Shown in pieces: positions 35,468-64,000 of a stretch of 64,000 nucleotides of DNA. The stretch is taken from assembly GCA_964057225.1 (NCBI GenBank), contig OZ059896.1, positions 14,880,001 through 14,944,000 on the forward strand. Direction: 5' to 3'. The DNA is from Auanema rhodensis (taxonomy: Eukaryota > Animalia > Nematoda). Under the pieces are notes generated by a model. That model had not been told where the DNA came from. It was given only the letters and a program-made list of their open reading frames with translations, and did no database searches. The position numbers and the translations under genes were made by a program. Every line of letters begins with the position of its first letter. The first letter of the stretch is position 1.

Positions 35468-35543
35468 TCTGAAAACAAGTAGCAGTGTAGATATCCTTAG
35501 GTCGCTGGTTCGAATCCTGCTCGACGGAGTTTCTTTTCTTTCC
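35468..35543 (+). pseudogene. Orphan partial tRNA-Tyr array unit, inverted relative to the main array (intron, 3' exon and terminator)
   Basis: GTAGCAGTGTAGATATCCTTAGGTCGCTGGTTCGAATCCTGCTCGACGGAGTTTCTTTTCTTT matches the array unit with 2 substitutions. It is preceded by TCTGAAAACAA, which matches the array 5' spacer. The A-box half is absent. Confidence 0.9.
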
Positions 35544-35764
35544 TGCATTGTTGGTGATTCGTTGAGCTCTCCACTGTTTCGTACTTCGGTTGGAACGCTT
35601 AACATCCATTGCAGCAATGATGTGTTCTTTTGTTTGATTTGCTGGGTTTCCATAACAACAAACCTAATTAGAAAAAGAATATTACATATCTTAAGTTAGG
35701 CTTAAATACATACATATGTTTGCAAAAAAATAAGAATAATTGATATTTTTCATACATTCAATTG

Positions 35765-38086: not shown

Positions 38087-38371
38087 ATCTACACTTCTAC
38101 CGTCCTCCGCTCTACCAACTGAGCTATCGACGGAAAGAATCTGTTGTTTTCAGAGGTTATTGTCAATAACTGCTATAATCAATATTTTAAACGGAAGAAA
38201 AAGAAAAGAAATTCCGTCGAGCCGAATTCGAACCAGCGACCTAAGGATATCTACACTTCTACCGTCCTCCGCTCTACCAACTGAGCTATCGACGGAAAGA
38301 ATCTGTTATTTTCAGAGGTTATTGTCAATAACTGCTATAATCAATATTGAACAAAAAAAAAGAAAAGAAAC

Positions 38372-38454
38372 TCCGTCGAGCCGGATTCGAACCAGCGACC
38401 TAAGGATATCTACACTTCTACAGTCCTCCGCTCTACCAACTGAGCTATCGACGG
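38372..38454 (-). tRNA. tRNA-Tyr-GTA: tRNA-Tyr(GTA) with 10-nt intron, representative intact copy
   Basis: Minus strand reads CCGTCGATAGCTCAGTTGGTAGAGCGGAGGACTGTAG-aagtgtagat-ATCCTTAGGTCGCTGGTTCGAATCCGGCTCGACGGA. It has a full cloverleaf, A and B boxes, an intron at the canonical 37/38 position, and T4/T5 Pol III terminator runs immediately downstream. Confidence 0.97.
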
Positions 38455-38691
38455 AACGAATCTGTTGTTTTCAGAGGTTATTGTCAATAACTGCTATAAT
38501 CAATATTGAACAAAAAAAAAGAAAAGAAACTCCGTCGAGCCGGATTCGAACCAGCGACCTAAGGATATCTACACTTCTACCGTCCTCCGCTCTACCAACT
38601 GAGCTATCGACGGAAAGAATCTGTTATTTTCAGAGGTTATTGTCAATAACTGCTATAATCAATATTGAACAAAAAAAAAGAAAAGAAACTC

Positions 38692-44600: not shown

Positions 44601-47600
44601 ATCAATATTTTAAATGGGAGAAAAAGAAAAGAAACTCCGTCGAGCCGGATTCGAACCAGCGACCTACGGATATCTACACTTCTACAGTCCTCCGCTCTAC
44701 CAACTGAGCTATCGACGGAACGAATCTGTTGTTTTCCAAAGTGATTGTCAATAACTACTATAATCTATATTGAAAATCGAAAAAAGAAAAGAAACTCCGT
44801 CGAGCCTAACTTCTACAATCCTCCGCTCTACCAACTGAGCTATCGACGGAACGAATCTGTTGTTTTCCAAAGTGATTGTCAATAACTACTATAATATATA
44901 TTGAAAATCGAAAAAAGAAAAGAAACTCCGTCGAGCCTAACTTCTACAATCCTCCGCTCTACCAACTGAGCTATCGACGGAACGAAGCTGTTGTTTTCAC
45001 AGGTTATTGTCAATAACTGCTATAATCAATATTTTAAATGGAACAAAAAGAAAAGAAACTCCGTCGAGCCGGATTCGAACCAGCGACCTAAGGATATCTA
45101 CACTTCTACAGTCCTCCGCTCTACCAACTGAGCTATCGACGGATCGAATCTGTTGTTTTCAGAGGTTATTGTCAATAACTGCTATAATCAATATTTTAAA
45201 TGGAAGAAAAAGAAAAGAAACTCCGTCGAGCCGGATTCGAACCAGCGACCTAAGGATATCTACACTTCTACAGTCCTCCGCTCTACCAACTGAGCTATCG
45301 ACGGAACGAATCTGTTGTTTTCCGAAGTGATTGTCAATAACTACTATAATCTATATTGAAAATCGAAAAAAGAAAAGAAACTCCGTCGAGCCTAACTTCT
45401 ACAATCCTCCGCTCTACCAACTGAGTTATCGACGGAACGAATCTGTTCTTTTCAGAGGTTATTGTCAATAACTGCTATAATCAATATTTTAAATGGGAGA
45501 AAAAGAAAAGAAACTCCGTCCAGCCGGATTCGAACCAGCGACCTAAGGATATCTACACTTCTACAGTGCTCCGCTCTACCAACTGAGCTATCGACGGAAC
45601 GAATCTGTTGTTTTCAGAGGTTATTGTCAATAACTGCTATAATCAATATTTTAAATGGAAGAAAAAGAAAAGAAACTCCGTCGAGCCGGATTCGAACCAG
45701 CGACCTAAGGATATCTACACTTCTACAGTCCTCCGCTCTACCAACTGAGCTATCGACGGAACGAATCTGTTGTTTTCCGAAGTGATTGTCAATAACTACT
45801 ATAATCTATATTGAAAATCGAAAAAAGAAAAGAAACTCCGTCGAGCCTAACTTCTACAATCCTCCGCTCTACCAACTGAGCTATCGACGGAACGAAGCTG
45901 TTGTTTTCAGAGGTTATTGTCAATAACTGCTATAATCAATATTTTAAATGGAACAAAAAGAAAAGAAACTCCGTCGAGCCGGATTCGAACCAGCGACCTA
46001 AGGATATCTACACTTCTACAGTCCTCCGCTCTACCAACTGAGCTATCGACGAATCGAATCTGTTGTTTTCAGAGGTTATTGTCAATAACTGCTATAATCA
46101 ATATTTTAAATGGAAGAAAAAGAAAAGAAACTCCGTCGAGCCGGATTCGAACCAGCGACCTAAGGATATCTACACTTCTACAGTCCTCCGCTCTACCAAC
46201 TGAGCTATCGACGGAACGAATCTGTTGTTTTCCGAAGTGATTGTCAATAACTACTATAATCTATATTGAAAATCGAAAAAAGAGAAGAAACTCCGTCGAG
46301 CCTAACTTCTACGATCCTCCGCTCTACCAACTGAGTTATCGATGGAACGAATCTGTTATTTTCAGAGGTTATTGTCAATAACTGCTATAATCAATATTTT
46401 AAATGGGAGAAAAAGAAAAGAAACTCCGTCGAGCCGGATTCGAACCAGCGACCTAAGGATATCTACACTTCTACAGTCCTCCGCTCTACCAACTGAGCTA
46501 TCGACGGAACGAATCTGTTGTTTTCCAAAGTGATTGTCAATAACTACTATAATCTATATTGAAAATCGAAAAAAGAAAAGAAACTCCGTCGAGCCTAACT
46601 TCTACAATCCTCCGCTCTACCAACTGAGCTATCGACGGAACGAATCTGTTGTTTTCCAAAGTGATTGTCAATAACTACTATAATCTATATTGAAAATCGA
46701 AAAAAGAAAAGAAACTCCGTCGAGCCTAACTTCTACAATCCTCCGCTCTACCAACTGAGTTATCGATGGAACGAATCTGTTATTTTCAGAGGTTATTGTC
46801 AATAACTGCTATAATCAATATTTTAAATGGGAGAAAAAGAAAAGAAACTCCGTCGAGCCGGATTCGAACCAGCGACCTAAGGATATCTACACTTCTACAG
46901 TCCTCCGCTCTACCAACTGAGCTATCGACGGAACGAAGCTGTTGTTTTCACAGGTTATTGTCAATAACTGCTATAATCAATATTTTAAATGGAACAAAAA
47001 GAAAAGAAACTCCGTCGAGCCGGATTCGAACCAGCGACCTAAGGATATCTACACTTCTACAGTCCTCCGCTCTACCAACTGAGCTATCGACGGATCGAAT
47101 CTGTTGTTTTCAGAGGTTATTGTCAATAACTGCTATAATCAATATTTTAAATGGAAGAAAAAGAAAAGAAACTCCGTCGAGCCGGATTCGAACCAGCGAC
47201 CTAAGGATATCTACACTTCTACAGTCCTCCGCTCTACCAACTGAGCTATCGACGGAACGAATCTGTTGTTTTCCGAAGTGATTGTCAATAACTACTATAA
47301 TCTATATTGAAAATCGAAAAAAGAAAAGAAACTCCGTCGAGCCTAACTTCTACAATCCTCCGCTCTACCAACTGAGTTATCGACGGAACGAATCTGTTCT
47401 TTTCAGAGGTTATTGTCAATAACTGCTATAATCAATATTTTAAATGGGAGAAAAAGAAAAGAAACTCCGTCCAGCCGGATTCGAACCAGCGACCTAAGGA
47501 TATCTACACTTCTACAGTGCTCCGCTCTACCAACTGAGCTATCGACGGAACGAATCTGTTGTTTTCAGAGGTTATTGTCAATAACTGCTATAATCAATAT

Positions 47601-50367
47601 TTTAAATGGAAGAAAAAGAAAAGAAACTCCGTCGAGCCGGATTCGAACCAGCGACCTAAGGATATCTACACTTCTACAGTCCTCCGCTCTACCAACTGAG
47701 CTATCGACGGAACGAATCTGTTGTTTTCCGAAGTGATTGTCAATAACTACTATAATCTATATTGAAAATCGAAAAAAGAAAAGAAACTCCGTCGAGCCTA
47801 ACTTCTACAATCCTCCGCTCTACCAACTGAGCTATCGACGGAACGAATCTGTTGTTTTCCGAAGTGATTGTCAATAACTACTATAATCTATATTGAAAAT
47901 CGAAAAAAGAAAAGAAACTCCGTCGAGCCTAACTTCTACAATCCTCCGCTCTACCAACTGAGCTATCGACGGAACGAAGCTGTTGTTTTCAGAGGTTATT
48001 GTCAATAACTGCTATAATCAATATTTTAAATGGAACAAAAAGAAAAGAAACTCCGTCGAGCCGGATTCGAACCAGCGACCTAAGGATATCTACACTTCTA
48101 CAGTCCTCCGCTCTACCAACTGAGCTATCGACGAATCGAATCTGTTGTTTTCAGAGGTTATTGTCAATAACTGCTATAATCAATATTTTAAATGGAAGAA
48201 AAAGAAAAGAAACTCCGTCGAGCCGGATTCGAACCAGCGACCTAAGGATATCTACACTTCTACAGTCCTCCGCTCTACCAACTGAGCTATCGACGGAACG
48301 AATCTGTTGTTTTCCGAAGTGATTGTCAATAACTACTATAATCTATATTGAAAATCGAAAAAAGAGAAGAAACTCCGTCGAGCCTAACTTCTACGATCCT
48401 CCGCTCTACCAACTGAGTTATCGATGGAACGAATCTGTTATTTTCAGAGGTTATTGTCAATAACTGCTATAATCAATATTTTAAATGGGAGAAAAAGAAA
48501 AGAAACTCCGTCGAGCCGGATTCGAACCAGCGACCTAAGGATATCTACACTTCTACAGTCCTCCGCTCTACCAACTGAGCTATCGACGGAACGAATCTGT
48601 TGTTTTCCAAAGTGATTGTCAATAACTACTATAATCTATATTGAAAATCGAAAAAAGAAAAGAAACTCCGTCGAGCCTAACTTCTACAATCCTCCGCTCT
48701 ACCAACTGAGCTATCGACGGAACGAATCTGTTGTTTTCCAAAGTGATTGTCAATAACTACTATAATCTATATTGAAAATCGAAAAAAGAAAAGAAACTCC
48801 GTCGAGCCTAACTTCTACAATCCTCCGCTCTACCAACTGAGCTATCGACGGAACGAAGCTGTTGTTTTCACAGGTTATTGTCAATAACTGCTATAATCAA
48901 TATTTTAAATGGAACAAAAAGAAAAGAAACTCCGTCGAGCCGGATTCGAACCAGCGACCTAAGGATATCTACACTTCTACAGTCCTCCGCTCTACCAACT
49001 GAGCTATCGACGGATCGAATCTGTTGTTTTCAGAGGTTATTGTCAATAACTGCTATAATCAATATTTTAAATGGAAGAAAAAGAAAAGAAACTCCGTCGA
49101 GCCGGATTCGAACCAGCGACCTAAGGATATCTACACTTCTACAGTCCTCCGCTCTACCAACTGAGCTATCGACGGAACGAATCTGTTGTTTTCCGAAGTG
49201 ATTGTCAATAACTACTATAATCTATATTGAAAATCGAAAAAAGAAAAGAAACTCCGTCGAGCCTAACTTCTACAATCCTCCGCTCTACCAACTGAGCTAT
49301 CGACGGAACGAATCTGTTGTTTTCCGAAGTGATTGTCAATAACTACTATAATCTATATTGAAAATCGAAAAAAGAAAAGAAACTCCGTCGAGCCTAACTT
49401 CTACAATCCTCCGCTCTACCAACTGAGCTATCGACGGAACGAAGCTGTTGTTTTCAGAGGTTATTGTCAATAACTGCTATAATCAATATTTTAAATGGAA
49501 CAAAAAGAAAAGAAACTCCGTCGAGCCGGATTCGAACCAGCGACCTAAGGATATCTACACTTCTACAGTCCTCCGCTCTACCAACTGAGCTATCGACGGA
49601 TCGAATCTGTTGTTTTCAGAGGTTATTGTCAATAACTGCTATAATCAATATTTTAAATGGAAGAAAAAGAAAAGAAACTCCGTCGAGCCGGATTCGAACC
49701 AGCGACCTAAGGATATCTACACTTCTACAGTCCTCCGCTCTACCAACTGAGCTATCGACGGAACGAATCTGTTGTTTTCAGAGGTTATTGTCAATAACTG
49801 CTATAATCAATATTTTAAATGGAAGAAAAAGAAAAGAAACTCCGTCGAGCCGGATTCGAACCAGCGACCTAAGGATATCTACACTTCTACAGTCCTCCGC
49901 TCTACCAACTGAGCTATCGACGGAACGAATCTGTTGTTTTCCGAAGTGATTGTCAATAACTACTATAATCTATATTGAAAATCGAAAAAAGAGAAGAAAC
50001 TCCGTCGAGCCTAACTTCTACAATCCTCCGCTCTACCAACTGAGTTATCGACGGAACGAATCTGTTATTTTCAGAGGTTATTGTCAATAACTGCTACAAT
50101 CAATATTTTAAATGGGAGAAAAAGAAAAGAAACTCCGTCGAGCCGGATTCGAACCAACGACCTAAGGATATCTACACTTCTACAGTCCTCCGCTCTACCA
50201 ACTGAGCTATCGACGGAACGAATCTGTTGTTTTCAGAGGTTATTGTCAATAACTGCTATAATCAATATTTTAAATGGAAGAAAAAGAAAAGAAACTCCGT
50301 CGAGCCGGATTCGAACCAGCGACCTAAGGATATCTACACTTCTACAGTCCTCCGCTCTACCAACTGA
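38692..50367 (-). tRNA. tRNA-Tyr-GTA: Block 1: many further tRNA-Tyr(GTA) copies interleaved with deleted units
   Basis: The same 83-nt gene recurs every 159-163 bp. A minority carry acceptor-stem, anticodon-stem or T-stem substitutions. Confidence 0.93.
40632..40685 (-). pseudogene. 54-nt internally deleted tRNA-Tyr unit (no B box or T arm), first of many copies
   Basis: CCGTCGATA(G/A)CTCAGTTGGTAGAGCGGAGGATTGTAGAAGTTAGGCTCGACGGA. The unit period is 131 bp (for example 43038 to 43169). Confidence 0.93.
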
Positions 50368-50539
50368 GCTATCGACGGAACGAATCTGTTGTTTTCCAAA
50401 GTGATTGTCAATAACTACTATAATCTATATTGAAAATCGAAAAAAGAAAAGAAACTCCGTCGAGCCTAACTTCTACAATCCTCCGCTCTACCAACTGAGT
50501 TATCGACGGAACGAATCTGTTCTTTTCAGAGGTTATTGT

Positions 50540-50952
50540 TGTTCCATACGTGTCCTATAAGTAGAGCGATTGACAACGTCAATCGCTTATAAAACGGAAC
50601 ATTATAAAAACAAATAGCTGACGCTACATTTGAGAAACAGGAATTCAATGCAACAATGAACGAACACTTTTTCATATTAAGTTTAATTAAAGAAAGCCCA
50701 ATTCAAGCGGAACCAAGTTCCGCGGACCTGATATAACCACTTTTTATGCTCGTAAGGAATACTATATAAGGTTTCCTTACGAGTCCTTTGGGCTGCGACT
50801 AGGAATCATTATGTAACTTTCATTATTGTAATTTGTATACTTTATCATGAATAAACCTTTCTCACTATACTCTTTATCATTTATATTTGGAAGAAAAGAA
50901 AGTAATTCCATGTGGTTACCCAGCCGGAACCCTGGGGAACCACCATGGAACG
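50540..50952 (+). repeat. 5' LTR of element A
   Basis: TATA-like TATATAAG at ~50763, AATAAA at 50850-50855, and a U5 stem-loop at 50906-50950. Confidence 0.93.
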
Positions 50953-50970
50953 TGGAGGTTCCGCCGAGAT
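50953..50970 (+). promoter_or_regulatory. Primer-binding site complementary to the tRNA-Gln 3' end
   Basis: TGGAGGTTCCGCCGAGAT is the reverse complement of the metazoan tRNA-Gln end ATCTCGGTGGAACCT-CCA with one G:U pair. Confidence 0.88.
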
Positions 50971-52365
50971 TCGTCTATAACCGACGAATCTCTAAGAACC
51001 ATATTTCGCTACATAAATTTAATTTTGTTGTCTTTCATACATCTAATTAAAGAATTATATTTCGATTATGCTATATGAATTCAATTTGAAATCTTTCTCT
51101 TCTTTATTTCATTCATTCAAAGAACTTTATTTTGATTTTGATTCATAAATTAATACTGAAATCTTATATACATTTATTTAAAAAGATATATTTTGAAACA
51201 ACTTAATTTTGAAATTTTATATTCATTCATTTAAAAGAAACATTTCGATTTTTATCCATATTCTAAGATCTTTCATTCATTTTTGAGGAAAAACTTCGTT
51301 TATAACTATCATAAATTAATTTGAAATTCTTTTATATTTATTCATTTAAAGAAAGGTATTTCGATATTTTTTTTTTTCTGTCAATCTTTTCTTTTTCTTT
51401 TTTTTAATCAAAATCTATTCTATCTCTCATAAATTCTTGTTATAAAGTTTGAAACAATTTTTGAATCAAAAATGAATTAATTTCTTTCATGAATCATCAC
51501 AAAATTCATTGTTTTATATATATTAAAATTCATTAATTTCTATTCTATCCTTTAAAATGTATTACTCATTTATATATATATATTTATGTACAAAACTATT
51601 CTATACTAGTACTATATTCCTACTATATTCCTACTATATTCCTATTTTATTTTTCTTTTATCTTCTTTTAAATTTCATCTTTTTCCCTCTCTTATTACTA
51701 TTATTTTTTCTCTTCTTCCTAATATAACCCAGAAAACAGTCAAATAATTTTGAAATTTTTTTTATCTGAATCCCGAAACTAAGATTTATAATTTTGCATT
51801 TTGATCCTAAAAGTAGCCCGTGAGAAGCAATACCAGACTGTCTCGAGAACTGAGCGGAGGCAACCACTATTTTTGATATAAGACGTACGCATTCCTGATT
51901 TTGAAGATCCCTTTTTTGGTCCTATTTTTGCAAATTTGAAAATTACGACAGAATTAGTCGAGAATGAAAGTGTTAGAGTGGTCTCACCATGAAAATCAGG
52001 GGAGCAGAATTTCGTTAAGGGAGCGATTTCTGTGATTTTTCATAGGCAAGAGAAGTCTGGGAAAGTGAATGTACGAGGCGTGAGCACCTAATCTTGTCGA
52101 AAGACTGAAAGGGAATACTGCTTAGATCACCGTCGTATATTTCACGCCTATTCGAGAGATGGGAACTTGATCCTAGAAAGGGCGCACCGGTCACAGGCCC
52201 GTGTATGTACCCGATTGAGCAATTCTCCGTTAGAAGATTCGCTGCAGGCTGGCCCCCTAGCAAGCGTCACGCATACAACCCCATTTTGCCTCTCACGTTG
52301 TATATATATTTTTATAAGATTCGCATCGTTGGTATAATAATTTCCTTTCCAGGAAAACCAACAAG

Positions 52366-53102
52366 ATGACGGACTCGAAGAGTAAAAATCCTCCGCAGGA
52401 TAAAACAAATCCACAGAGCGCAGCCCCCGGTAATGATACGCACGTCGAGCCAGTACTCGAGCGGAATCAAAGAAAAAGAGGACCTCCAAATGTTTATGAG
52501 CCGGACACGAAGCGCCGACCTACTGCTGCAAAGAAACCACCCGCTATACCGGGTACCCCCGCGAAGAAAATAGGCACAACAGCTATTAAAACTTCTCGCC
52601 ACGCTATTACTCTAAGTAAAATTAAAGCGTCTGTTAACAAACAAACTCCTAAACGCAATTCTAACGTTATCAAAAGCTCTAGCTATGTTAGCACAAATAC
52701 TTCCCCTTGTAAAGATTATTCTCAAATATCATTTTCATACCCAAATACTGCTATTCTTTCTTCTCCTCTTCCTCGAAATTCACCAAACTATCAGAGAAAA
52801 TAGAAGAAAACGCAAGAAAAGAATTATATGAGGAACGGAAGAAGGAGCCACCCACAATTAAGAAATGGAGTTCAGCACTTAAATTGGCATTGGGATTAGA
52901 AGATAATTCCCCTACAACGCCAGCAAAACCTTATCATGTGCCGATAAGGTATCACAGCACCATACCAGTAACAGAGCCGAAGAAGAGAGTTTCGAAGAGT
53001 CAGATCCCGGACCCAAACTTCGTGGCACCAACAGTACCAGTCATCCATAAGAAAAGACCGTCAACAGTTATTGGGACTACAAGTAAGAAGCTAGAACAAT
53101 AG
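52366..53102 (+). CDS. Element A cargo ORF1: basic, Pro/Lys/Thr-rich unknown protein, probably two exons (52366-52615, 52795-53102)
   Basis: TTTCCAG acceptor 14 nt before the ATG. A phase-1 GTAAAA...TATCAG intron (52616-52794) joins ORF 52366 in frame to KIEENARKELYEERKKEPPTIKKWSSALKLALG...KLEQ*. The sequence is GC-richer than its flanks. Confidence 0.5.
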
Positions 53103-53470
53103 TAAAAATCCATAATTTCTATATAAAAATCACAAAAAGTATAATACCATTTTCATAATTTTCATCTAAACTTGAACCTATATATGATTTTTTTTTCTCA
53201 TTTAAGTAAGACATAAAATTCTACACAAATTATTGTACATTTTTATTTTTTTCACTCTCATAAAAATATTGTATCAATAACCAAAATTTCAAAATAAAAT
53301 TATACATCATACTTGGAATCTTTCAAAAATCACTGCAAAGTTTTAATCAACAATCTTCATCATTTTTTTTTTCACCTAACTGGTCAAAAAGGAGGCGACA
53401 AAAAGGAAGGAACAGACCGACCTAGTTTTAAAAAGGATAAAAAGGACAGAAAACAGTAACAAAGATAACA

Positions 53471-54073
53471 ATGTCCACCCAACTCCCTGAAGCCGTCGAA
53501 ATTCCCCTCATGATGGCCAAAAAGAGATGGCTTTCAATTCAACTATTAGTAAGAGAATTGAAGCAGCTAGGCGCCAATACCATCGCCAACCGCCCCAGGA
53601 AAGAGAAGAACCTGAAAGAGTTAGTTCAAGGACTAACAAGAGCGAACACCAGTACTGAAACGCTCAAAATCCTATGTTACCAATACGACAAGGATCGACT
53701 GTCGGAGGTTGACCACTACATAGGACCATGGACCAACATAGCAGGAGTCATCCGAGAAGCCATTGCTGAACTAAGGGACCAACTAGGTTATTCACCTAGT
53801 TGCGATTCACCAGAACAGCAGACACCAAACTGGATTATTGCCGAGACCCATTCGGCCTATCAAGAATGGAGCCTGCAACATTGCAGCGAACTGCCATCCA
53901 CAGAGGCAAGAAAAAGCATTATAAATGCTCTACAAATATTTCTGGCATCACCAGCAACCACCAAGGAAGAAATGGAAAGAAAAACGGATTTATGCAACAA
54001 GACTATGTATCTTCTCCACGACCTAGGATCATCACCATTACCAGAGATACACCAGTATTATGAAGAAGACTAA
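53471..54073 (+). CDS. Element A cargo ORF2: 200-aa unknown protein
   Basis: Intact ATG-TAA ORF with protein-like composition in very AT-rich surroundings, ending ~200 bp before the 3' LTR. I recognise no motif. Confidence 0.7.
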   Translation: MSTQLPEAVEIPLMMAKKRWLSIQLLVRELKQLGANTIANRPRKEKNLKELVQGLTRANTSTETLKILCYQYDKDRLSEVDHYIGPWTNIAGVIREAIAELRDQLGYSPSCDSPEQQTPNWIIAETHSAYQEWSLQHCSELPSTEARKSIINALQIFLASPATTKEEMERKTDLCNKTMYLLHDLGSSPLPEIHQYYEED

Positions 54074-54280
54074 AAAGAACCTTTGAAAGATTCCCAGTAT
54101 GATATATGATATATTATTTTGTAATTACATCGTTTCCCTTCATTTTTTCTTCATTAAATTATTCTATATTATCAATATTCTTTTATATATTTTTTAAAAC
54201 ATTTCCTACAACTTTCACATTTGCATGGAATTTCACTTTCTCGATGTAGCTGAGGTCAGCTACTTTTTCGGTATTAGGCA

Positions 54281-54693
54281 TGTTCCATACGTGTCCTATA
54301 AGTAGAGCGATTGACAACGTCAATCGCTTATAAAACGGAACATTATAAAAACAAATAGCTGACGCTACATTTGAGAAACAGGAATTCAATGCAACAATGA
54401 ACGAACACTTTTTCATATTAAGTTTAATTAAAGAAAGCCCAATTCAAGCGGAACCAAGTTCCGCGGACCTGATATAACCACTTTTTATGCTCGTAAGGAA
54501 TACTATATAAGGTTTCCTTACGAGTCCTTTGGGCTGCGACTAGGAATCATTATGTAACTTTCATTATTGTAATTTGTATACTTTATCATGAATAAACCTT
54601 TCTCTCTATACTCTTTATCATTTATATTTGGAAGAAAAGAAAGTAATTCCATGTGGTTACCCAGCCGGAACCCTGGGGAACCACCATGGAACG
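54281..54693 (+). repeat. 3' LTR of element A
   Basis: Copy of 50540-50952. Confidence 0.93.
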
Positions 54694-54746
54694 TTGTCAA
54701 TAACTGCTATAATCAATATTTTAAATGGGAGAAAAAGAAAAGAAAC

Positions 54747-57559
54747 TCCGTCGAGCCGGATTCGAACCAGCGACCTAAGGATATCTACACTTCTACAGTG
54801 CTCCGCTCTACCAACTGAGCTATCGACGGAACGAATCTGTTGTTTTCAGAGGTTATTGTCAATAACTGCTATAATCAATATTTTAAATGGAACAAAAAGA
54901 AAAGAAACTCCGTCGAGCCGGATTCGAACCAGCGACCTAAGGATATCTACACTTCTACAGTCCTCCGCTCTACCAACTGAGCTATCGACGGAACGAATCT
55001 GTTGTTTTCCGAAGTGATTGTCAATAACTACTATAATCTATATTGAAAATCGAAAAAAGAGAAGAAACTCCGTCGAGCCTAACTTCTACAATCCTCCGCT
55101 CTACCAACTGAGTTATCGACGGAACGAATCTGTTCTTTTCAGAGGTTATTGTCAATAACTGCTATAATCAATATTTTAAATGGGAGAAAAAGAAAAGAAA
55201 CTCCGTCGAGCCGGATTCGAACCAGCGACCTAAGGATATCTACACTTCTACAGTCCTCCGCTCTACCAAGTGAGCTATCGACGGAACGAATCTGTTGTTT
55301 TCAGAGGTTATTGTCAATAACTGCTATAATCAATATTTTAAATGAAAGAAAAAGAAGAGAAACTCCGTCGAGCCGGATTCGAACCAGCGACCTAAGGATA
55401 TCTACACTTCTACAGTCCTCCGCTCTACCAACTGAGCTATCGACGGAACGAATCTGTTGTTTTCCGAAGTGATTGTCAATAACTACTATAATCAATATTT
55501 CAAATGGGAGAAAAAGAAAAGAAACTCCGTCGAGCCGGATTCGAACCAGCGACCTAAGGATATCTACACTTCTACAGTCCTCCGCTCTACCAACTGAGCT
55601 ATCGACGGAACGAATCTGTTGTTTTCAGAGGTTATTGTCAATAACTACTATAATCTATATTGAAAATCGAAAAAAGAAAAGAAACTCCGTCGAGCCTAAC
55701 TTCTACAATCCTCCGCTCTACCAACTGAGCTATCGACGGAACGAAGCTGTTGTTTCCAGAGGTTATTGTCAATAACTGCTATAATCAATATTTTAAATGG
55801 AACAAAAAGAAAAGAAACTCCGTCGAGCCGGATTCGAACCAGCGACCTAAGGATATCTACACTTCTACAGTCCTCCGCTCTACCAACTGAGCTATCGACG
55901 GAACGAATCTGTTGTTTTCCGAAGTGATTGTCAATAACTACTATAATCTATATTGAAAATCGAAAAAAGAAAAGAAACTCCGTCGAGCCTAACTTCTACA
56001 ATCCTCCGCTCTACCAACTGAGTTATCGACGGAACGAATCTGTTATTTTCAGAGGTTATTGTCAATAACTGCTATAATCAATATTTTAAATGGGAGAAAA
56101 AGAAAAGAAACTCCGTCGAGCCGGATTCGAACCAGCGACCTAAGGATATCTACACTTCTACAGTCCTCCGCTCTACCAACTGAGCTATCGACGGAACGAA
56201 TCTGTTGTTTTCAGAGGTTATTGTCAATAACTGCTATAATCAATATTTTAAATGGAACAGAAAGAAAAGAAACTCCGTCGAGCCGGATTCGAACCAGCGA
56301 CCTAAGGATATCTACACTTCTACAGTCCTCCGCTCTACCAACTGAGCTATCGACGGAACGAATCTGTTGTTTTCAGAGGTTATTGTCAATAACTGCTATA
56401 ATCAATATTTTAAATGGAAGAAAAAGAAAAGAAACTCCGTCGAGCCGGATTCGAACCAGCGACCTAAGGATATCTACACTTCTACAGTCCTCCGCTCTAC
56501 CAACTGAGCTATCGACGGAACGAATCTGTTGTTTTCAGAGGTTATTGTCAATAACTACTATAATCTATATTGAAAATCGAAAAAAGAAAAGAAACTCCGT
56601 CGAGCCTAACTTCTACAATCCTCCGCTCTACCAACTGAGCTATCGACGGAACGAAGCTGTTGTTTTCAGAGGTTATTGTCAATAACTGCTATAATCAATA
56701 TTTTAAATGGAACAAAAAGAAAAGAAACTCCGTCGAGCCGGATTCGAACCAGCGACCTAAGGATATCTACACTTCTACAGTCCTCCGCTCTACCAACTGA
56801 GCTATCGACGGAACGAATCTGTTGTTTTCCGAAGTGATTGTCAATAACTACTATAATCTATATTGAAAATCGAAAACAGAAAAGAAACTCCGTCGAGCCT
56901 AACTTCTACAATCCTCCGCTCTACCAACTGAGTTATCGACGGAACGAATCTGTTATTTTCAGAGGTTATTGTCAATAACTGCTATAATCAATATTTTAAA
57001 TGGGAGAAAAAGAAAAGAAACTCCGTCGAGCCGGATTCGAACCAGCGACCTAAGGATATCTACACTTCTACAGTCCTCCGCTCTACCAACTGAGCTATCG
57101 ACGGAACGAATCTGTTGTTTTCAGAGGTTATTGTCAATAACTGCTATAATCAATATTTTAAATGGAAGAAAAAGAAAAGAAACTCCGTCGAGCCGGATTC
57201 GAACCAGCGACCTAAGGATATCTACACTTCTACAGTCCTCCGCTCTACCAACTGAGCTATCCACGGAACGAATCTGTTGTTTTCCGAAGTGATTGTCAAT
57301 AACTACTATAATCTATATTGAAAATCGAAAAAAGAAAAGAAACTCCGTCGAGCCTAACTTCTACAATCCTCCGCTCTACCAACTGAGCTATCGACGGAAC
57401 GAATCTGTTGTTTTCCGAAGTGATTGTCAATAACTACTATAATCAATATTTTAAATGGAACAAAAAGAAAAGAAACTCCGTCGAGCCGGATTCGAACCAG
57501 CGACCTAAGGATATCTACACTTCTACAGTCCTCCGCTCTACCAACTGAGCTATCGACGG
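54747..57559 (-). tRNA. tRNA-Tyr-GTA: Block 2 of tRNA-Tyr(GTA) copies between the two LTR elements
   Basis: Same 162/131-bp units. Confidence 0.93.
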
Positions 57560-57582
57560 AACGAATCTGTTCTTTTCAGAGG

Positions 57583-57927
57583 CGTTCCGTTATGCTCCTG
57601 CGTCGATAATATAAACCATTGTAGTTTATACCATGACGCGAATAGTATTCCTTGGTGTAGCGGTAAGGAATAAAGAGCATAAGGTCAATCATAAGATAAA
57701 AGAGAGAAAGATTTATTGGCATGAAACTACAACAATAATATACAAAGATAAAGATACAATACAATAAGATAAATATAAGTATAAAGACTAAACTACAAGC
57801 CGTCCATGAGCTTGCTAAGAGGCGAACTCGCGACCAAGGGAACGAGGGAAGGCGGAGCCATTCCTCGGTCCTCTGGTCGTCTGGCTCTAACCCTTCAGCT
57901 ACATATATGGGGAGTCCGAATGGAACG
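57583..57927 (-). repeat. 3' LTR of element B
   Basis: Copy of 60795-61139, preceded on the minus strand by a PPT-like tract at 57928-57938. Confidence 0.93.
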
Positions 57928-58567
57928 TGCCCTTTTTCAAAGATTTTTCGCGTCCGCGCGATATAAAGAGTTTTTAGTGTATATGTAGCTGAGTTTTAGA
58001 GTCTAGGAGTTTACAAATAAATTTAAAAGTTTTAAAATCTACATGTAGAAAGATATATAAATAGTTTTAATGGGTTTCTTTATGGTATTAAGATAGAATT
58101 TGAATACAATAATAGGTTTTATGTTATTTTGTAACGGAGGATTAGAAAATAAATTTAGTCATTGTAGTACTGTAATAAAAAAAAATTCTTTGTTTCATGA
58201 ATGTGTGATTTATGTGAGACACTAAGGAATTATTAAATATTTCGGTTACATGGTTACTCGTATCCTAATGATGATGGGGATAATTTTAGTTAATAATTTA
58301 CTCGTCTCCATATGTCTCTCTGAATGAATCCTTGAGTACTAATGGAGGCTACCACTCAGATGGGGTGTGGCTTAGGCGCCTGCCAATGTTCGTCTCTTCC
58401 TGGAGATACATATGGAGCTCAGTTTAGCGCAAAATTTTATCTCTATCGGTCGTATAGGATTACGGTAGCCATTTATTTCTATTATATTTTCACTTATTCC
58501 TTATTTTTGGTTGTTTACTCACTTAATCTCTCATCAAAAAGTTTTCTAATTCACCGTTACTTTCCTT

Positions 58568-58870
58568 TTACAATTTACAGAAAAGAAAAGAATGTATATA
58601 AAAATTTTTTCTGTCGTCGGCTTTGATGAAGTCCGGATCTTCGTAGGTGTCGTCAGAAGGTGAATATGTTCCTTCTCGGGGAGTATAAAACTGGTCGACT
58701 TGCGGCTTCGGCTTCTCGGCTGGTTGGTGCGGTTTTTCTATTTGAACACTAAGAAGTCGGGTACGGCTTCTGCGACGTTTTGCGACAGTAGCGTCACTGT
58801 TGGTATCGGACGGGTAAAGGGCTCGGAAAACCGATGAGAATCTTTTGGCCACCTTTATAGGACTCTTGGT
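58568..58870 (-). CDS. Element B basic low-complexity ORF (sense to the element), probably an exon of a larger gene
   Basis: KSPIKVAKRFSSVFRALYPS...AKRRRSRTR...EDPDFIK. GC-richer than its flanks, with weak similarity to element A ORF1. Start and splice structure are unresolved. Confidence 0.4.
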   Translation of the reverse strand, partial: TKSPIKVAKRFSSVFRALYPSDTNSDATVAKRRRSRTRLLSVQIEKPHQPAEKPKPQVDQFYTPREGTYSPSDDTYEDPDFIKADDRKNFYIHSFLFCKL

Positions 58871-59267
58871 TTGGAAAAACCGAGAATGGTGAGCTACGTG
58901 TGGGATGTTGACGTAAGGTGCGTAAGATTCTTTTAGATGTGTGTTGGGAGAGAGAAAGATTCGGGAGCAATAGGATAGTCATGCTTTGCTGGGCGATGCG
59001 GAGGGTAAATGAGAGGGAGTTTTTCAAATCCTGGCCAGGAATCTGACTCCGCCTATCTACCGTAAGCTTATTATAGTTAATGATGTTTATCTCTTCGCAA
59101 AAACTATTTTTATCCGCTCTTGCACTTACCTCTAATTTTGTTTTCTTACTGCTCTAGAATCTTTAAAAAAAACTTTATTCATGTCATCCCCTTTGTACTT
59201 TTGCGGCCTTTGGACATTTATTTTAAGGTTAGAAACAAAAGAAAAGAAAAGAAAGAAAGAAAAAAAA

Positions 59268-59812
59268 ATGAATTTCCAACGTTATAATCCCACTGGCATG
59301 ACTTATGTCCTGTGGAAATTATACGAATCCATCGTTGAGTACGATGGAGAAGGAGTTTTGGCTTATAGGCCAAATCTTGATATAATTTTAATGGTTTGTG
59401 TATCTCCATTTTATGTTTGATTATTTGATTACTTTAGTTTATCGAAGATCACCAAATGTATTATTTGGGGCAGGGCCATATAAACTTTGCCACCTTCGTA
59501 GATGTAGCTCCCGAAGTGGAGCTTGTTGGTCGAAGGTGCTTAGTTGATCTATGCGCTCATGTATATAATGGTAGGGCCGGTTTATTAACCGCACGTCCTT
59601 GGGCCTGGTACCAGGAAAAGAGTCATTTTTATTATTATTTATTATATAGATTATTGTTTAAAATCTATATTGTTTATGATGACTCATTATTTGGTTTGGA
59701 ACTTAGGGTTTCGCGAGGTTTAGAATATAGTGAAGATTTAATTGCGAGCGAAACTCCTATGTTTCTTGCCTCTGAGTTTCGAACTCGGTTGCAAATCAAA
59801 TATGGGTATTGA
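59268..59812 (+). CDS. Element B cargo gene, two exons (59268-59393, 59438-59812), 166 aa, antisense to the element
   Basis: AAAAATG start. A 44-nt phase-0 intron GTTTGT...ACTTTAG joins MNFQRYNPTG...DIILM to FIEDHQMYYLGQGH...IKYGY*. AATAAA lies at 59816-59821, just after the stop. Confidence 0.7.
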
Positions 59813-60781
59813 CTGAATAAAGTTTGTACTCTGTGTTTTTATTTTTGTGCACTTTGCTCTGTTTTCGTCAAGAAAATGGACTTATGTTTGCAATCTTTTC
59901 CTCATTCCTTTTCCCTTAAATAGCATGTTTTGCTCAAAATGTTTTCGACATTGTGCATGCTAATGAGGTTTGAGGAGAGTTATTGAAAAGGCTGTCCTTT
60001 TTCTTGATCAAAATGAGCAAAAGTGCGTTTTCCTAAGCGAATTTCTTTTTAAAAATTAGAAAAATACGTCTATTTTTAAACATTTCCCATTTACTTAGGA
60101 TTACTGTAGGATATAAGGGGTATCTTATGAGTTGAAACAACGAAATGATTTGAGGAAGGTGACATAATCTACGGGGATAAAATCCGTAGCAGTTATGCTT
60201 CCGCCAACTTGACCTGACTGTCAAATAAGAGCTGAGAAGTCTTATTGCAGATTTACCAGGCTTTTTCGGACTAGTGTGGTCCCTTTTTATATTCAATTTA
60301 TGTAACCGTTTTTGGTTTCCCGCAAAATAATATGTAAAATGATCTTTTACGTCTGAATATAATAATTTCAAAATTCTAGTCCTGACCACAAAATATACAA
60401 ACTATAATCAATTGCGCGCGTCTTATGAATTTTTGTTCCAATAATCAAACTTCTCTATGCCCCCCAAAAAAAATGTGAACAACTATATTTTCTCGTTTGG
60501 CGAAATTGTCCTCTATTTCAATCCAAACGTCCTCAAAATGGCATGAGAAGCGGTACAAGATACGATATAGAAAAGGGTGGACATTCAGACGGTTTTAATT
60601 GAGGACAGCGGGCAAAATTTTTATTGGTCCTATCTCGCATTTAAGCGAGATCCCTTGTATCTGTACCTTAAAACAAATTGGCGCCTTCATTTTGTTGTTT
60701 CAAGTGGAGGAATTTATAATTTAGAATGCAAAAATGGACTTTTACAATAAAAACAAATTTTTGTTCAAAAGATGAGTTCGA

Positions 60782-60794
60782 GGTGGAACCTCCA
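60782..60794 (-). promoter_or_regulatory. Primer-binding site complementary to the tRNA-Gln 3' end (element B)
   Basis: Minus strand TGGAGGTTCCACC directly follows the LTR end ...ACGGAACG. It is a 13-nt perfect complement of GGTGGAACCT-CCA. Confidence 0.85.
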
Positions 60795-61139
60795 CGTTCC
60801 GTTATGCTCCTGCGTCGATAATATAAACCATTGTAGTTTATACCATGACGCGAATAGTATTCCTTGGTGTAGCGGTAAGGAATAAAGAGCATAAGGTCAA
60901 TCATAAGATAAAAGAGAGAAAGATTTATTGGCATGAAACTACAACAATAATATACAAAGATAAAGATACAATACAATAAGATAAATATAAGTATAAAGAC
61001 TAAACTACAAGCCGTCCATGAGCTTGCTAAGAGGCGAACTCCCGACCAAGGGAACGAGGGAAGGCGGAGCCATTCCTCGGTCCTCTGGTCGTCTGGCTCT
61101 AACCCTTCAGCTACATATATGGGGAGTCCGAATGGAACG
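60795..61139 (-). repeat. 5' LTR of element B
   Basis: AATAAA on the minus strand at 60924-60929, in a context similar to that in LTR A. Confidence 0.93.
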
Positions 61140-61199
61140 GAGGTTATTGTCAATAACTGCTATAATCAATATTTTAAATGGGAGAAAAAGAAAAGAAAC

Positions 61200-63995
61200 T
61201 CCGTCCAGCCGGATTCGAACCAGCGACCTAAGGATATCTACACTTCTACAGTCCTCCGCTCTACCAACTGAGCTATCGACGGAACGAATCTGTTGTTTTC
61301 CGAAGTGATTGTCAATAACTACTATAATCTATATTGAAAATCGAAAAAAGAGAAGAAACTCCGTCGAGCCTAACTTCTACAATCCTCCGCTCTACCAACT
61401 GAGTTATCGACGGAACGAATCTGTTCTTTTCAGAGGTTATTGTCAATAACTGCTATAATCAATATTTTAAATGGGAGAAAAAGAAAAGAAACTCCGTCGA
61501 GCCGGATTCGAACCAGCGACCTAAGGATATCTACACTTCTACAGTCCTCCGCTCTACCAACTGAGCTATCGACGGAACGAATCTGTTGTTTTCAGAGGTT
61601 ATTGTCAATAACTGATATCTACACTTCTACAGTCCTCCGCTCTACCAACCGAGCTATCGACGGAACGAATCTGTTGTTTTCCAAAGTGATTGTCAATAAC
61701 TACTATAATCTATATTGAAAATCGAAAAAAGAAAAGAAACTCCGTCGAGCCTAACTTCTACAATCCTCCGCTCTACCAACTGAGCTATCGACGGAACGAA
61801 GCTGTTGTTTTCAGAGGTTATTGTCAATAACTGCTATAATCAATATTTTAAATGGAAGAAAAAGAAAAGAAACTCCGTCGAGCCGGATTCGAACCAGCGA
61901 CCTAAGGATATCTACACTTCTACAGTCCTCCGCTCTACCAACTGAGCTATCGACGGAACGAATCTGTTGTTTTCAGAGGTTATTGTCAATAACTGCTATA
62001 ATCAATATTTTAAATGAAAGAAAAAGAAAAGAAACTCCGTCGAGCCGGATTCGAACCAGCGACCTAAGGATATCTACACTTCTACAGTCCTCCGCTCTAC
62101 CAACTGAGCTATCGACGGAACGAATCTGTTGTTTTCCAAAGTGATTGTCAATAACTACTATAATCTATATTGAAAATCGAAAAAAGAGAAGAAACTCCGT
62201 CGAGCCTAACTTCTACAATCCTCCGCTCTACCAACTGAGTTATCGACGGAACGAATCTGTTCTTTTCAGAGGTTATTGTCAATAACTGCTATAATCAATA
62301 TTTTAAATGGGAGAAAAAGAAAAGAAACTCCGTCGAGCCGGATTCGAACCAGCGACCTAAGGATATCTACACTTCTACAGTCCTCCGCTCTACCAACTGA
62401 GCTATCGACGGAACGATTCTGTTGTTTTCAGAGCTTATTGTCAATAACTGCTATAATCAATATTTTAAATGAAAGAAAAAGAAAAGAAACTCCGTCGAGC
62501 CGGATTCGAACCAGCGACCTAAGGATATCTACTCTTCTACAGTCCTCCGCTCTACCAACTGAGCTATCGACGGAACGAATCTGTTGTTTTCCGAAGTGAT
62601 TGTCAATAACTACTATAATCTATATTGAAAATCGGAAAAAGAGAAGAAACTCCGTCGAGCCTAACTTCTACAATCCTCCGCTCTACCAACTGAGTTATCG
62701 ACGGAACGAATCTGTTCTTTTCAGAGGTTATTGTCAATAACTGCTATAATCAATATTTTAAATGGAAGAAAAAGAAAAGAAACTCCGTCGAGCCGGATTC
62801 GAACCAGCGACCTAAGGATATCTACACTTCTACAGTCCTCCGCTCTACCAACTGAGCTATCGACGGAACGAATCTGTTGTTTTCAGAGGTTATTGTCAAT
62901 AACTGATATCTACACTTCTACAGTCCTCCGCTCTACCAACCGAGCTATCGACAGAACGAATCTGTTGTTTTCCAAAGTGATTGTCAATAACTACTATAAT
63001 CTATATTGAAAATCGAAAAAAGAAAAGAAACTCCGTCGAGCCTAACTTCTACAATCCTCCGCTCTACCAACTGAGCTATCGACGGAACGAAGCTGTTGTT
63101 TTCAGAGGTTATTGTCAATAACTGCTATAATCAATATTTTAAATGGAAGAAAAAGAAAAGAAACTCCGTCGAGCCGGATTCGAACCAGCGACCTAAGGAT
63201 ATCTACACTTCTACAGTCCTCCGCTCTACCAACTGAGCTATCGACGGAACGAATCTGTTGTTTTCAGAGCTTATTGTCAATAACTGCTATAATCAATATT
63301 TTAAATGAAAGAAAAAGAAAAGAAACTCCGTCGAGCCGGATTCGAACCAGCGACCTAAGGATATCTACTCTTCTACAGTCCTCCGCTCTACCAACTGAGC
63401 TATCGACGGAACGAATCTGTTGTTTTCCGAAGTGATTGTCAATAACTACTATAATCTATATTGAAAATCGGAAAAAGAGAAGAAACTCCGTCGAGCCTAA
63501 CTTCTACAATCCTCCGCTCTACCAACTGAGTTATCGACGGAACGAATCTGTTCTTTTCAGAGGTTATTGTCAATAACTGCTATAATCAATATTTTAAATG
63601 GAAGAAAAAGAAAAGAAACTCCGTCGAGCCGGATTCGAACCAGCGACCTAAGGATATCTACACTTCTACAGTCCTCCGCTCTACCAACTGAGCTATCGAC
63701 GGAACGAATCTGTTGTTTTCCAAAGTGATTGTCAATAACTACTATAATCTATATTGAAAATCGAAAAAAGAGAAGAAACTCCGTCGAGCCTAACTTCTAC
63801 AATCCTCCGCTCTACCAACTGAGTTATCGACGGAACGAATCTGTTCTTTTCAGAGGTTATTGTCAATAACTGCTATAATCAATATTTTAAATGGGAGAAA
63901 AAGAAAAGAAACTCCGTCGAGCCGGATTCGAACCAGCGACCTAAGGATATCTACACTTCTACAGTCCTCCGCTCTACCAACTGAGCTATCGATGG
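61200..63995 (-). tRNA. tRNA-Tyr-GTA: Block 3 of tRNA-Tyr(GTA) copies, running off the window end
   Basis: Same units plus a third deletion variant at 61614 and 62905. Confidence 0.93.
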
Positions 63996-64000
63996 AACGA

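What the first reader, a model, noticed from the sequence alone, without database searches (positions are those of the whole stretch)
50536..61143. Two distinct but related pol-less LTR elements, both inserted 20-30 bp upstream of tRNA-Tyr units: candidate Pol III-gene-targeting, cargo-carrying retrotransposon family
Seen in sequence: elements A (50540-54693, +) and B (57583-61139, -) have different LTRs (413 vs 345 bp) and different interiors, so they are independent insertions. They nevertheless share YGTTCC...GGAACG termini, a tRNA-Gln PBS with no spacer after the LTR, GGCA directly before the 3' LTR and 4-bp TSDs. They also share a similar poly(A) context (CATGAATAAACCTTTCTC vs CATGCCAATAAATCTTTCTC) and the 12-mer AAGGAATACTAT. 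Counting from the mature tRNA +1, the TSDs lie at -27..-30 (A) and -20..-23 (B), 7 bp apart within a 131-162-bp unit and in opposite orientations. Each LTR pair differs at one visible site, so both insertions are young. Established knowledge: yeast Ty3 and Dictyostelium DGLT-A (Ty3/gypsy class) integrate just upstream of tRNA genes via the Pol III machinery. I know of no well-described nematode equivalent. Inference: an active autonomous Ty3/gypsy-like helper elsewhere mobilises these non-autonomous elements into tRNA 5' flanks as a safe harbour. Caveats: n=2, and the unit next to A is a B-box-less copy.
Basis: partly seen in the sequence, partly recalled or inferred. Interest (0 to 1): 0.9.

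Follow-up and report, generated by a model that had tools for sequence, protein, structure and literature searches.

The report
Two LTR retroelements in tRNA-Tyr array
Two young, gene-poor LTR retrotransposons of two related, undescribed families sit 7 bp apart in phase in the 5' flanks of tRNA-Tyr units of a huge tandem array, which hints at yeast/amoeba-style targeting of Pol III genes in an animal, but two copies in one array cannot prove it.

Summary
Element A (50540-54693, +) has 413-bp LTRs and element B (57583-61139, -) has 345-bp LTRs. Each LTR pair differs at one site. Both elements have exact 4-bp target-site duplications, the same LTR-end/primer-site 16-mer (a tRNA-Gln-type PBS) and GGCA before the 3' LTR. 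Their duplications lie at -27..-30 and -20..-23 from tRNA-Tyr(GUA) units. Deleting each element plus one duplication restores a junction found exactly in 10 other units.

No reverse transcriptase, integrase, protease or gag domain occurs in any frame, so both are non-autonomous. "Cargo" is not supported. A carries one statistically real but orphan 200-aa ORF, and B is essentially non-coding.

Pol III targeting is plausible but unproven. The random chance of both landing in the -33..-13 window known for DGLT-A is about 1.4%. However, n=2, any site in this array is within 80 bp of a tRNA, and A's downstream unit lacks a B box.

The host genome could not be reached with the tools, so the decisive genome-wide test and the search for an autonomous partner were not possible.

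The parts
38086..64000 (-). Tandem tRNA-Tyr(GUA) array, the target of both insertions. It has about 122 units: 162-bp units with a full intron-containing tRNA (72-77 copies) and 131-bp units with an internally deleted tRNA lacking the B box (42 copies). It runs off the window end.
50456..50509 (-). Truncated 54-nt tRNA-Tyr remnant lacking the B box. Element A lies 27-30 bp upstream of its +1 position (50509).
50536..50539 (+). Left target-site duplication of A (TTGT)
50540..50952 (+). A 5' LTR, 413 bp, TGTTCC...GGAACG. TATATAA at 50763-50769 and AATAAA at 50850-50855.
50953..50973 (+). A primer-binding site, with no spacer after the LTR. 19 of 21 nt match the antisense of the mammalian tRNA-Gln 3' end.
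52366..52803 (+). A ORF1, 145 aa, basic, Pro/Ser/Thr/Lys-rich, with no homologue. It overlaps an open segment in another frame (52713-53099). The two pieces were not joined.
53471..54073 (+). A ORF3, 200 aa, predicted all-helical, orphan. Its 210-codon open segment is longer than in all 500 dinucleotide shuffles.
54270..54280 (+). A plus-strand primer position. It ends in GGCA but is poorly purine-rich.
54281..54693 (+). A 3' LTR, 413 bp, with 1 mismatch to the 5' LTR
54694..54697 (+). Right target-site duplication of A (TTGT)
54747..54829 (-). Full tRNA-Tyr whose 3' end lies about 50 bp from the A insertion. It carries G30C in the anticodon stem.
57477..57559 (-). Full consensus tRNA-Tyr. Element B lies 20-23 bp upstream of its +1 position.
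57579..57582 (-). Target-site duplication of B on its 3' side (CCTC on the minus strand)
57583..57927 (-). B 3' LTR, 345 bp, with 1 mismatch to the 5' LTR
57928..57938 (-). B polypurine-like tract ending in GGCA
57939..60773 (-). B interior. There is no significant ORF (longest open segment 136 codons, reached by 13 of 500 shuffles), no protein domain, no RNA family and no similarity to A's interior.
60774..60794 (-). B primer-binding site. Its first 13 nt are identical to the antisense of the tRNA-Gln 3' end.
60795..61139 (-). B 5' LTR, 345 bp, CGTTCC...GGAACG. AATAAA at 60929-60924.
61140..61143 (-). Target-site duplication of B on its 5' side (CCTC on the minus strand)
61200..61282 (-). Full tRNA-Tyr whose 3' end lies about 57 bp from the B insertion. 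It carries C77G in the acceptor stem.

Best explanation
A and B are two young, non-autonomous LTR retrotransposons. They belong to two different families of one lineage that is so far undescribed.

Inferred life cycle:
- Each is transcribed from its 5' LTR and polyadenylated after the AATAAA in the 3' LTR.
- The RNA is packaged and reverse-transcribed in trans by the Gag-Pol of an autonomous relative that lies outside this window.
- Minus-strand synthesis is primed by tRNA-Gln at a PBS abutting the LTR.
- Plus-strand synthesis is primed at a tract ending in GGCA.
- The copy is inserted by an integrase that makes a 4-bp staggered cut and tolerates ...CG-3' ends.

The two independent insertions landed 7 bp apart in unit phase. 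Both lie in or at the edge of a 15-bp AT-rich palindrome at -23..-37 of the tRNA-Tyr units. This is the region where TFIIIB sits on Pol III genes.

The most likely reading is that the helper's integrase prefers DNA next to the Pol III initiation complex, as Ty3 and DGLT-A do, which would make a 120-unit tRNA array a very large target.

Shown: the anatomy, the independence of the insertions, their youth, the absence of pol and the precise insertion sites. Inferred: mobilisation in trans, the promoter and poly(A) assignments, and above all the targeting mechanism.

My confidence is about 0.95 for the identity, about 0.5 for some real positional preference, and about 0.35-0.4 for a Pol III-complex tether.
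For: - LTR pairs, duplications, PBS and GGCA are as described. The LTR-end/PBS 16-mer is unique to the two elements.
- The PBS matches published tRNA-Gln antisense probes.
- The R/poly(A) regions are significantly similar between the two LTR types.
- None of 81 open segments of at least 35 aa, in six frames, matches any Pfam domain beyond chance.
- Empty-site reconstruction matches 10 intact units exactly.
- Insertion distances are -27..-30 and -20..-23. Both fall inside the 13-33 bp upstream window reported for Dictyostelium DGLT-A (PMC5006619).
- Under uniform insertion in the array, 12% of positions fall in that window, so 1.4% for both.
- The array makes up only 32% of the element-free window, yet holds both elements.
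- The palindrome at -23..-37 is hit by both insertions.
- A LINE abuts a tRNA unit truncated inside the gene body at 38086. This is consistent with gene-body disruptions being tolerated in the array, in which case selection alone would not force the LTR elements into the spacer.
Against: - There are only two copies, both in one array, where every position is at most 80 bp from a tRNA. The co-phase probability is only 0.09, and the window test is partly post hoc.
- The unit downstream of A lacks the B box, so TFIIIC-dependent assembly there is doubtful.
- Each insertion is also 50-57 bp downstream of a full tRNA, so the upstream reading is not unique.
- Both sites share a rare spacer variant found in 13 of 121 spacers. 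This could point instead to a sequence preference.
- No autonomous partner, no solo LTR and no further copy was seen in the window or in any collection.
- The termini are not TG...CA.
- A's polypurine tract is weak.
Confidence: 0.45

Rival explanations
1. Tolerance, not targeting. The helper integrates without regard to Pol III genes. Redundant, partly degenerate tRNA arrays simply tolerate and retain insertions, and the similar phase of A and B is coincidence.
For: - The co-phase chance is 9%, which is not rare.
- Other transposons sit at the array edge: a LINE at 35.7-38.1 kb and a Tc1/mariner remnant at 35.1-35.6 kb.
- 27 of 77 full tRNA copies and all 42 truncated units are already mutated.
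- No Pol III-targeting LTR element of an animal appears in the reviews I read.
Against: - Two different families both lie in an array that is a third of the element-free window.
- Both lie in a window that covers 12% of array positions and matches DGLT-A.
- Under pure tolerance, gene-body hits should be as common as spacer hits.
Confidence: 0.3
2. DNA-directed preference. The integrase favours a local sequence or shape, independently of Pol III factors. Candidates are the AT-rich 15-bp palindrome and the rare spacer variant with G at -12.
For: - A's duplication lies near the palindrome centre and B's overlaps its edge.
- Both sites carry the same rare spacer variant, found in 13 of 121 spacers, for a post hoc probability of about 0.01.
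- Retroviral-type integrases are known to show weak palindromic target preferences (general knowledge).
- This fits A lying upstream of a unit that lacks the B box.
Against: - The duplicated tetranucleotides differ (TTGT and CCTC).
- The orientations are opposite.
- 71 spacers carry the perfect palindrome, so it does not single out these two.
- The spacer variant is locally enriched in the right half of the array.
Confidence: 0.15
3. Targeting downstream of tRNA genes. The insertions are positioned by the full tRNA 50-57 bp upstream in tRNA sense, through TFIIIC or the terminator region. Dictyostelium TRE3 and Skipper-2 behave this way.
For: Both insertions have a full-length tRNA with intact A and B boxes at +50 and +57 from its 3' end. 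This removes the problem of the unit that lacks the B box. Downstream-targeting elements are documented (PMC5006619).
Against: Documented downstream targeting shows broad distance ranges. The array cannot distinguish the two frames of reference.
Confidence: 0.07
4. Assembly artefact. The elements were misplaced into a collapsed or mis-joined repeat array.
For: Long tandem arrays are error-prone to assemble.
Against: The 4-bp duplications are exact. All four junctions are clean. The reconstructed empty sites are identical to 10 other units. The LTR pairs are intact.
Confidence: 0.03

Closest known systems
DGLT-A (Dictyostelium Ty3/gypsy-type LTR retrotransposon)
   Same: It inserts 13-33 bp upstream of the mature tRNA 5' end (PMC5006619). 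A and B lie at 27-30 and 20-23 bp. It has a PBS close to the left LTR and a purine tract before the right LTR. Many of its copies are non-autonomous or solo.
   Different: DGLT-A encodes a gag-RT-RNH-IN ORF and lives in amoebae. Its PBS lies 2 bp from the LTR and matches no known tRNA. Here there is no pol, the host is an animal (probably a nematode), the PBS is of tRNA-Gln type and abuts the LTR, and only two copies are known.
Ty3 of Saccharomyces cerevisiae
   Same: It is an LTR element that integrates just upstream of Pol III genes through TFIIIB. Its insertion point corresponds to about 12-15 bp before the mature tRNA end.
   Different: Ty3 is autonomous, has TG...CA ends and hits a window of a few bp at the transcription start. 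A and B lie 8-15 bp further upstream, and their tether is unknown.
Tj1 of Schizosaccharomyces japonicus
   Same: [quoted passage not shown]
   Different: It is a fungal, autonomous element. No sequence relation could be tested.
LARD / TRIM / TR-GAG non-autonomous LTR retrotransposons
   Same: They have LTRs, a PBS and a purine tract but no pol, and they are moved in trans by autonomous relatives (PMC10886601).
   Different: TRIMs are under 1 kb, whereas A and B are 4.15 and 3.56 kb. ORF3 of A has no recognisable gag domain. Unlike Cassandra, Helenus and Ajax, these LTRs hold no tRNA- or 5S-like sequence.
Nematode LTR retrotransposons (Cer1 gypsy-type, Cer/BEL-Pao type)
   Same: The probable host phylum is the same, and the general LTR-PBS layout is shared.
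   Different: No relation could be tested without pol. I found no report that the nematode families prefer tRNA genes.

Membership tests
LTR retrotransposon (class I, order LTR) | Two direct long terminal repeats flanking an internal region | tested here: met
   413-bp and 345-bp pairs, each 99.7% identical
LTR retrotransposon (class I, order LTR) | Target-site duplication of 4-6 bp | tested here: met
   TTGT and CCTC. The empty site is restored exactly.
LTR retrotransposon (class I, order LTR) | PBS complementary to a tRNA 3' end next to the 5' LTR | tested here: met
   Both start with TGGAGGTTCC. A matches the mammalian tRNA-Gln antisense probe at 19 of 21 nt and B at 13 of 13. The host's own tRNA-Gln was not seen.
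LTR retrotransposon (class I, order LTR) | Polypurine tract directly before the 3' LTR | tested here: inconclusive
   B has an 11-nt purine-rich run ending in GGCA. A has only ...TTAGGCA.
LTR retrotransposon (class I, order LTR) | TG...CA terminal dinucleotides | tested here: not met
   A is TG...CG and B is CG...CG. The boundaries are fixed by the differing flanks.
Autonomous LTR retrotransposon | gag and pol (protease, RT, RNase H, integrase) coding capacity | tested here: not met
   No such Pfam domain in 81 open segments across six frames. The best E-value of 0.017 is to an unrelated DUF.
Non-autonomous LTR derivative (LARD-like) | LTR, PBS and PPT retained, with an interior of several kb lacking pol | tested here: met
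   Interiors of 3328 and 2867 bp without pol
Non-autonomous LTR derivative (LARD-like) | An autonomous partner sharing the LTR ends and PBS | not testable with these tools
   No partner in the window. The host genome is not in any collection.
Ty3/gypsy (Metaviridae) | RT-RNase H-integrase order and RT phylogeny | not testable with these tools
   No pol sequence is available.
Pol III-gene-targeting retrotransposons (Ty3 / DGLT-A behaviour) | Most independent copies lie in a narrow window next to Pol III genes | tested here: inconclusive
   2 of 2 copies lie at -20..-30. Chance is 1.4% for both within -33..-13 and 9% for co-phase. All copies are within one array.
Pol III-gene-targeting retrotransposons (Ty3 / DGLT-A behaviour) | The target gene has a functional internal promoter (A and B boxes) | tested here: inconclusive
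   B lies upstream of a consensus full tRNA. A lies upstream of a 54-nt remnant lacking the B box.
Pol III-gene-targeting retrotransposons (Ty3 / DGLT-A behaviour) | Association with several kinds of Pol III genes at dispersed loci | not testable with these tools
   The array holds the only tRNA genes in the window.
TRIMp3 (Cassandra / Helenus / Ajax) | [quoted passage not shown] | tested here: not met
   No Rfam match at E<=1 in either element

The most novel reading that the evidence does not exclude
A nematode (or at least metazoan) lineage of LTR retrotransposons, with non-canonical YG...CG ends and a tRNA-Gln primer, has independently evolved integrase tethering to the Pol III initiation complex. 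Its autonomous members and their non-autonomous derivatives would then home to the -20..-30 region of tRNA genes. This would be the first animal counterpart of Ty3 and DGLT-A.
Probability: 0.3. Interest if true: 0.75.

Novelty: new member of a known kind. Interest (0 to 1): 0.5.

Why it matters
Targeting of Pol III genes by retrotransposons is the textbook case of safe-harbour integration. In the reviews I read it is documented only for yeasts and social amoebae.

A metazoan example would show another convergent origin. It would also give a natural integrase-tether pair in an animal, and help explain how compact nematode genomes tolerate active LTR elements.

Even without targeting, the locus is useful. 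The array provides dozens of built-in empty sites, so it is a clean record of two recent retrotranspositions by non-autonomous elements with unusual ...CG-3' ends.

Tried and rejected
1. External copies and the autonomous partner.
- Exact-protein look-ups for A ORF3, the mariner ORF and a host ORF found nothing on record.
- Homologue searches with ORF3 found nothing among 5.8 billion proteins or 1.84 billion representatives.
- A metagenome scan with the 19-nt LTR/PBS junction gave 18 hits. Seventeen are chance matches in GC-rich or bacterial-type coding DNA. One is a eukaryote-like contig (L010) with no LTR, tRNA or pol.
- The viral collection gave 0 hits.
- A search with an ORF read across array units found only weak tRNA-part hits.

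2. Host identification. The LINE RT gave hits of only about 40% identity. The named ones are mostly Meloidogyne and Caenorhabditis, with some birds and a turtle. A nematode host is plausible but not shown, and the species is not represented.

3. Function of the ORFs.
- Pfam, PHROGs and PDB sequence searches were empty.
- The single-sequence AlphaFold model of ORF3 has pLDDT 40, so I did not run a fold search on it.
- ORF1 and the overlapping open segment in another frame were searched apart and not joined.

4. A small-RNA-derived LTR (Cassandra-like) is rejected.

5. The shared 12-mer as evidence of homology. It is not collinear with the aligned R region, so it carries little weight.

6. Mutated neighbouring tRNAs as a consequence of insertion. 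35% of all copies are non-consensus, so this is not significant.

No contig was taken to be human.

Full report
**Observation.** The window from about 38086 to its end is a tandem array on the minus strand. I counted 122 units. Seventy are 162 bp long and hold an 83-nt tRNA. Forty-two are 131 bp long and hold an internally deleted 54-nt remnant that has lost the B-box/T-arm region.

Rfam scores the full copies at 61 bits as tRNA, with a 13-nt insertion in the anticodon loop. ARAGORN, run without intron handling, miscalls the copies as Leu-tag or Ser-aga.

Two blocks interrupt the array.
- Element A (50540-54693, + strand) has 413-bp LTRs that differ at one site.
- Element B (57583-61139, - strand) has 345-bp LTRs that differ at one site.
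- The duplications are TTGT for A and CCTC for B (minus strand).
- The termini are TGTTCC...GGAACG for A and CGTTCC...GGAACG for B.
- The PBS follows the LTR with no spacer, and GGCA precedes each 3' LTR.

Because the flanks differ on both sides, the LTR limits are unambiguous. The ends really are YG...CG and not TG...CA.

The 16-mer spanning the LTR end and PBS occurs only at these two places in the window, against 0.02 expected. Published mouse tRNA-Gln antisense probes begin with the same letters. A matches at 19 of 21 positions and B at the first 13.

Removing each element and one duplication copy restores a 60-nt junction. That junction is present exactly in 10 other units. This serves as an internal empty-site control and argues strongly against an assembly artefact.

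The +1 positions of the downstream units are 50509 and 57559. The duplications therefore lie at -27..-30 and -20..-23.

**How A and B are related.** BLASTN finds no similarity between the two LTR types or between the two interiors, and no further copy or solo LTR anywhere in the window. No open segment of A resembles one of B at protein level.

A local alignment of the LTRs does find about 70 nt around the AATAAA signal. It scores 36, against 19.7 +/- 2.5 for shuffles. The 5' 11 nt agree at 9 positions.

The shared 12-mer is real but not collinear with that alignment. It touches the TATA box at position 215 in A and lies 60 nt after the AATAAA in B. I give it little weight.

Two families of one lineage, inserted independently, is the reading that fits.

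**Coding capacity.** I scanned all 81 stop-free segments of at least 35 aa, in six frames, from both interiors against Pfam. Nothing retroelement-like appeared, and the best E-value was 0.017 to an unrelated DUF. Both elements are therefore non-autonomous.

A has a 200-aa ORF at 53471-54073. Its 210-codon open segment exceeds all 500 dinucleotide shuffles, whose mean is 96-104 and maximum 186, so it is probably a real or recently real gene. It has no homologue among 5.8 billion clustered proteins, among 1.84 billion representatives read without a length limit, in PHROGs or in the PDB. The single-sequence model is all-helical but unreliable, with pLDDT 40.

ORF1 (145 aa) is basic and of low complexity. 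It overlaps an open segment in another frame. I searched the pieces apart and did not join them.

B's longest open segment is 136 codons, reached by 13 of 500 shuffles, so it is unremarkable.

Neither element matches any Rfam family even at E<=1, so they are not Cassandra/Helenus-type elements. The label 'cargo-carrying' therefore has no support. ORF3 could equally be a diverged capsid-like or accessory gene of the lineage.

**Targeted or tolerated?** With the elements removed, the array is 18,196 bp, or 32% of the element-free window.
- Under uniform insertion in the array, 12% of positions put a 4-bp duplication inside -33..-13. That is the window reported for DGLT-A (PMC5006619). Both landing there has probability 1.4%.
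- For the post hoc window -30..-20 the figure is 0.3%.
- Two random insertions agree in phase within 7 bp 9% of the time.

A 15-bp palindrome (GTTATTG-N-CAATAAC) spans -23..-37 in 71 spacers. A's duplication lies near its centre and B's overlaps its proximal edge. From general knowledge of Pol III promoters, this is where TFIIIB binds.

A LINE abuts a tRNA unit truncated within its intron at 38086. This is consistent with disruptions of the gene body being tolerated in the array.

Several points argue against a firm conclusion.
- n=2.
- In this array every site is within 80 bp of a tRNA.
- Each insertion is also 50-57 bp downstream of a full tRNA.
- A's downstream unit lacks the B box.
- Both insertions sit in the same rare spacer variant, with G at -12, found in 13 of 121 spacers. 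That variant normally precedes a truncated unit, and the unit after B is the only full one that has it. This might point to a sequence preference, or to local array history.

I put about 0.5 on a real positional preference and 0.35-0.4 on a Pol III-complex tether.

**What could not be done.** The decisive test is the distribution of all copies relative to Pol III genes, together with identification of the autonomous partner. It needs the host genome, which none of the collections holds.
- Exact look-ups failed.
- The LINE RT has only about 40%-identical relatives. The named ones are mostly Meloidogyne and Caenorhabditis, which makes a nematode host plausible but not proven.
- An ORF read across array units finds only the tRNA part elsewhere.
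- The junction scan of metagenomes returned chance hits.

**Literature.** The Pol III-targeting review (PMC5911963), the dictyostelid survey (PMC5006619) and a 2026 review of insertion niches (PMC13269885) name only yeasts and amoebae. Full-text searches for nematode or animal cases found none.

**Verdict.** This is an accurate observation of two new non-autonomous LTR retrotransposons with unusual ends. It offers an attractive but under-powered hint of tRNA-gene targeting in an animal.

Noticed in passing
window 38086-64000: The tRNA-Tyr array is itself remarkable. It has at least 122 units in 18 kb of array DNA. Full 162-bp units and 131-bp units lacking the B box alternate in higher-order patterns. 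27 of 77 full copies are non-consensus, and the array runs off the window end.
   Followed up: partly
window 50509-50539, 57559-57582 and 11 other spacers (+1 at 40685, 42505, 43677, 45435, 47386, 55122, 61413, 62249, 62704, 63540, 63833): Both insertions lie in the same rare spacer variant (G instead of C at -12), found in 13 of 121 spacers. The variant normally precedes a truncated unit, and the unit after B is the only full-length unit with it. This is unexplained. It could be target preference, stalled homogenisation next to the insertions, or chance (post hoc p about 0.01).
   Followed up: partly
window 54747-54829 and 61200-61282: The full tRNA just upstream (in tRNA sense) of each element carries one half of a double variant. 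The full double variant (G30C + C77G) is seen together at 43839, 45597 and 47548. Here 54829 has G30C only and 61282 has C77G only. Both changes break stem pairs.
   Followed up: partly
window, 71 spacers, e.g. 38156-38170: A perfect 15-bp palindrome GTTATTG-N-CAATAAC lies at -23..-37 of the tRNA units, and 47 further spacers hold an imperfect version. It may be an upstream Pol III promoter element or a protein-binding site.
   Followed up: partly
window 35478-35540: A 63-bp piece of a tRNA-Tyr unit (end of the intron, 3' half and 3' flank) lies in inverted orientation relative to the array. It is embedded in frame inside a Tc1/mariner (DDE_3) transposase remnant at 35145-35609.
   Followed up: no
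window 35931-38085: A CR1-like LINE has a 431-aa RT ORF at 35931-37226. Its 3' end abuts a tRNA-Tyr unit truncated inside its intron at 38086 and forms the left edge of the array. The missing half of that unit appears to be the inverted fragment at 35478-35540, with which it shares 9 nt.
   Followed up: no
window 1410-11773: A near-perfect tandem segmental duplication has periods of 5417 and about 4945 bp. It includes identical 144-aa ORFs at 3876-4310 and 9293-9727.
   Followed up: no
window 14738-15109: An exon-like ORF with a protein-kinase domain (Pfam Pkinase, E=4.6e-14). By eye it resembles a TGF-beta type I receptor kinase. It is a host gene upstream of the array.
   Followed up: no
window 51610-51644: An 11-bp tandem repeat (TACTATATTCC x 3.2) inside A's AT-rich leader. 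More diffuse repeats of about 113 bp lie at 51100-51370.
   Followed up: no
window 26555-26834 and 31337-31556: Two related microsatellite-like arrays with periods of 8-14 bp, about 4.6 kb apart.
   Followed up: no
L010:10059-10078: A eukaryote-like metagenome contig (41% GC) carries the same GGAACG + tRNA-Gln-type PBS 19-mer, followed by a 10-bp tandem repeat. No second LTR copy, tRNA or pol ORF lies on the contig. It is probably chance, or the edge of an unrelated retroelement.
   Followed up: partly
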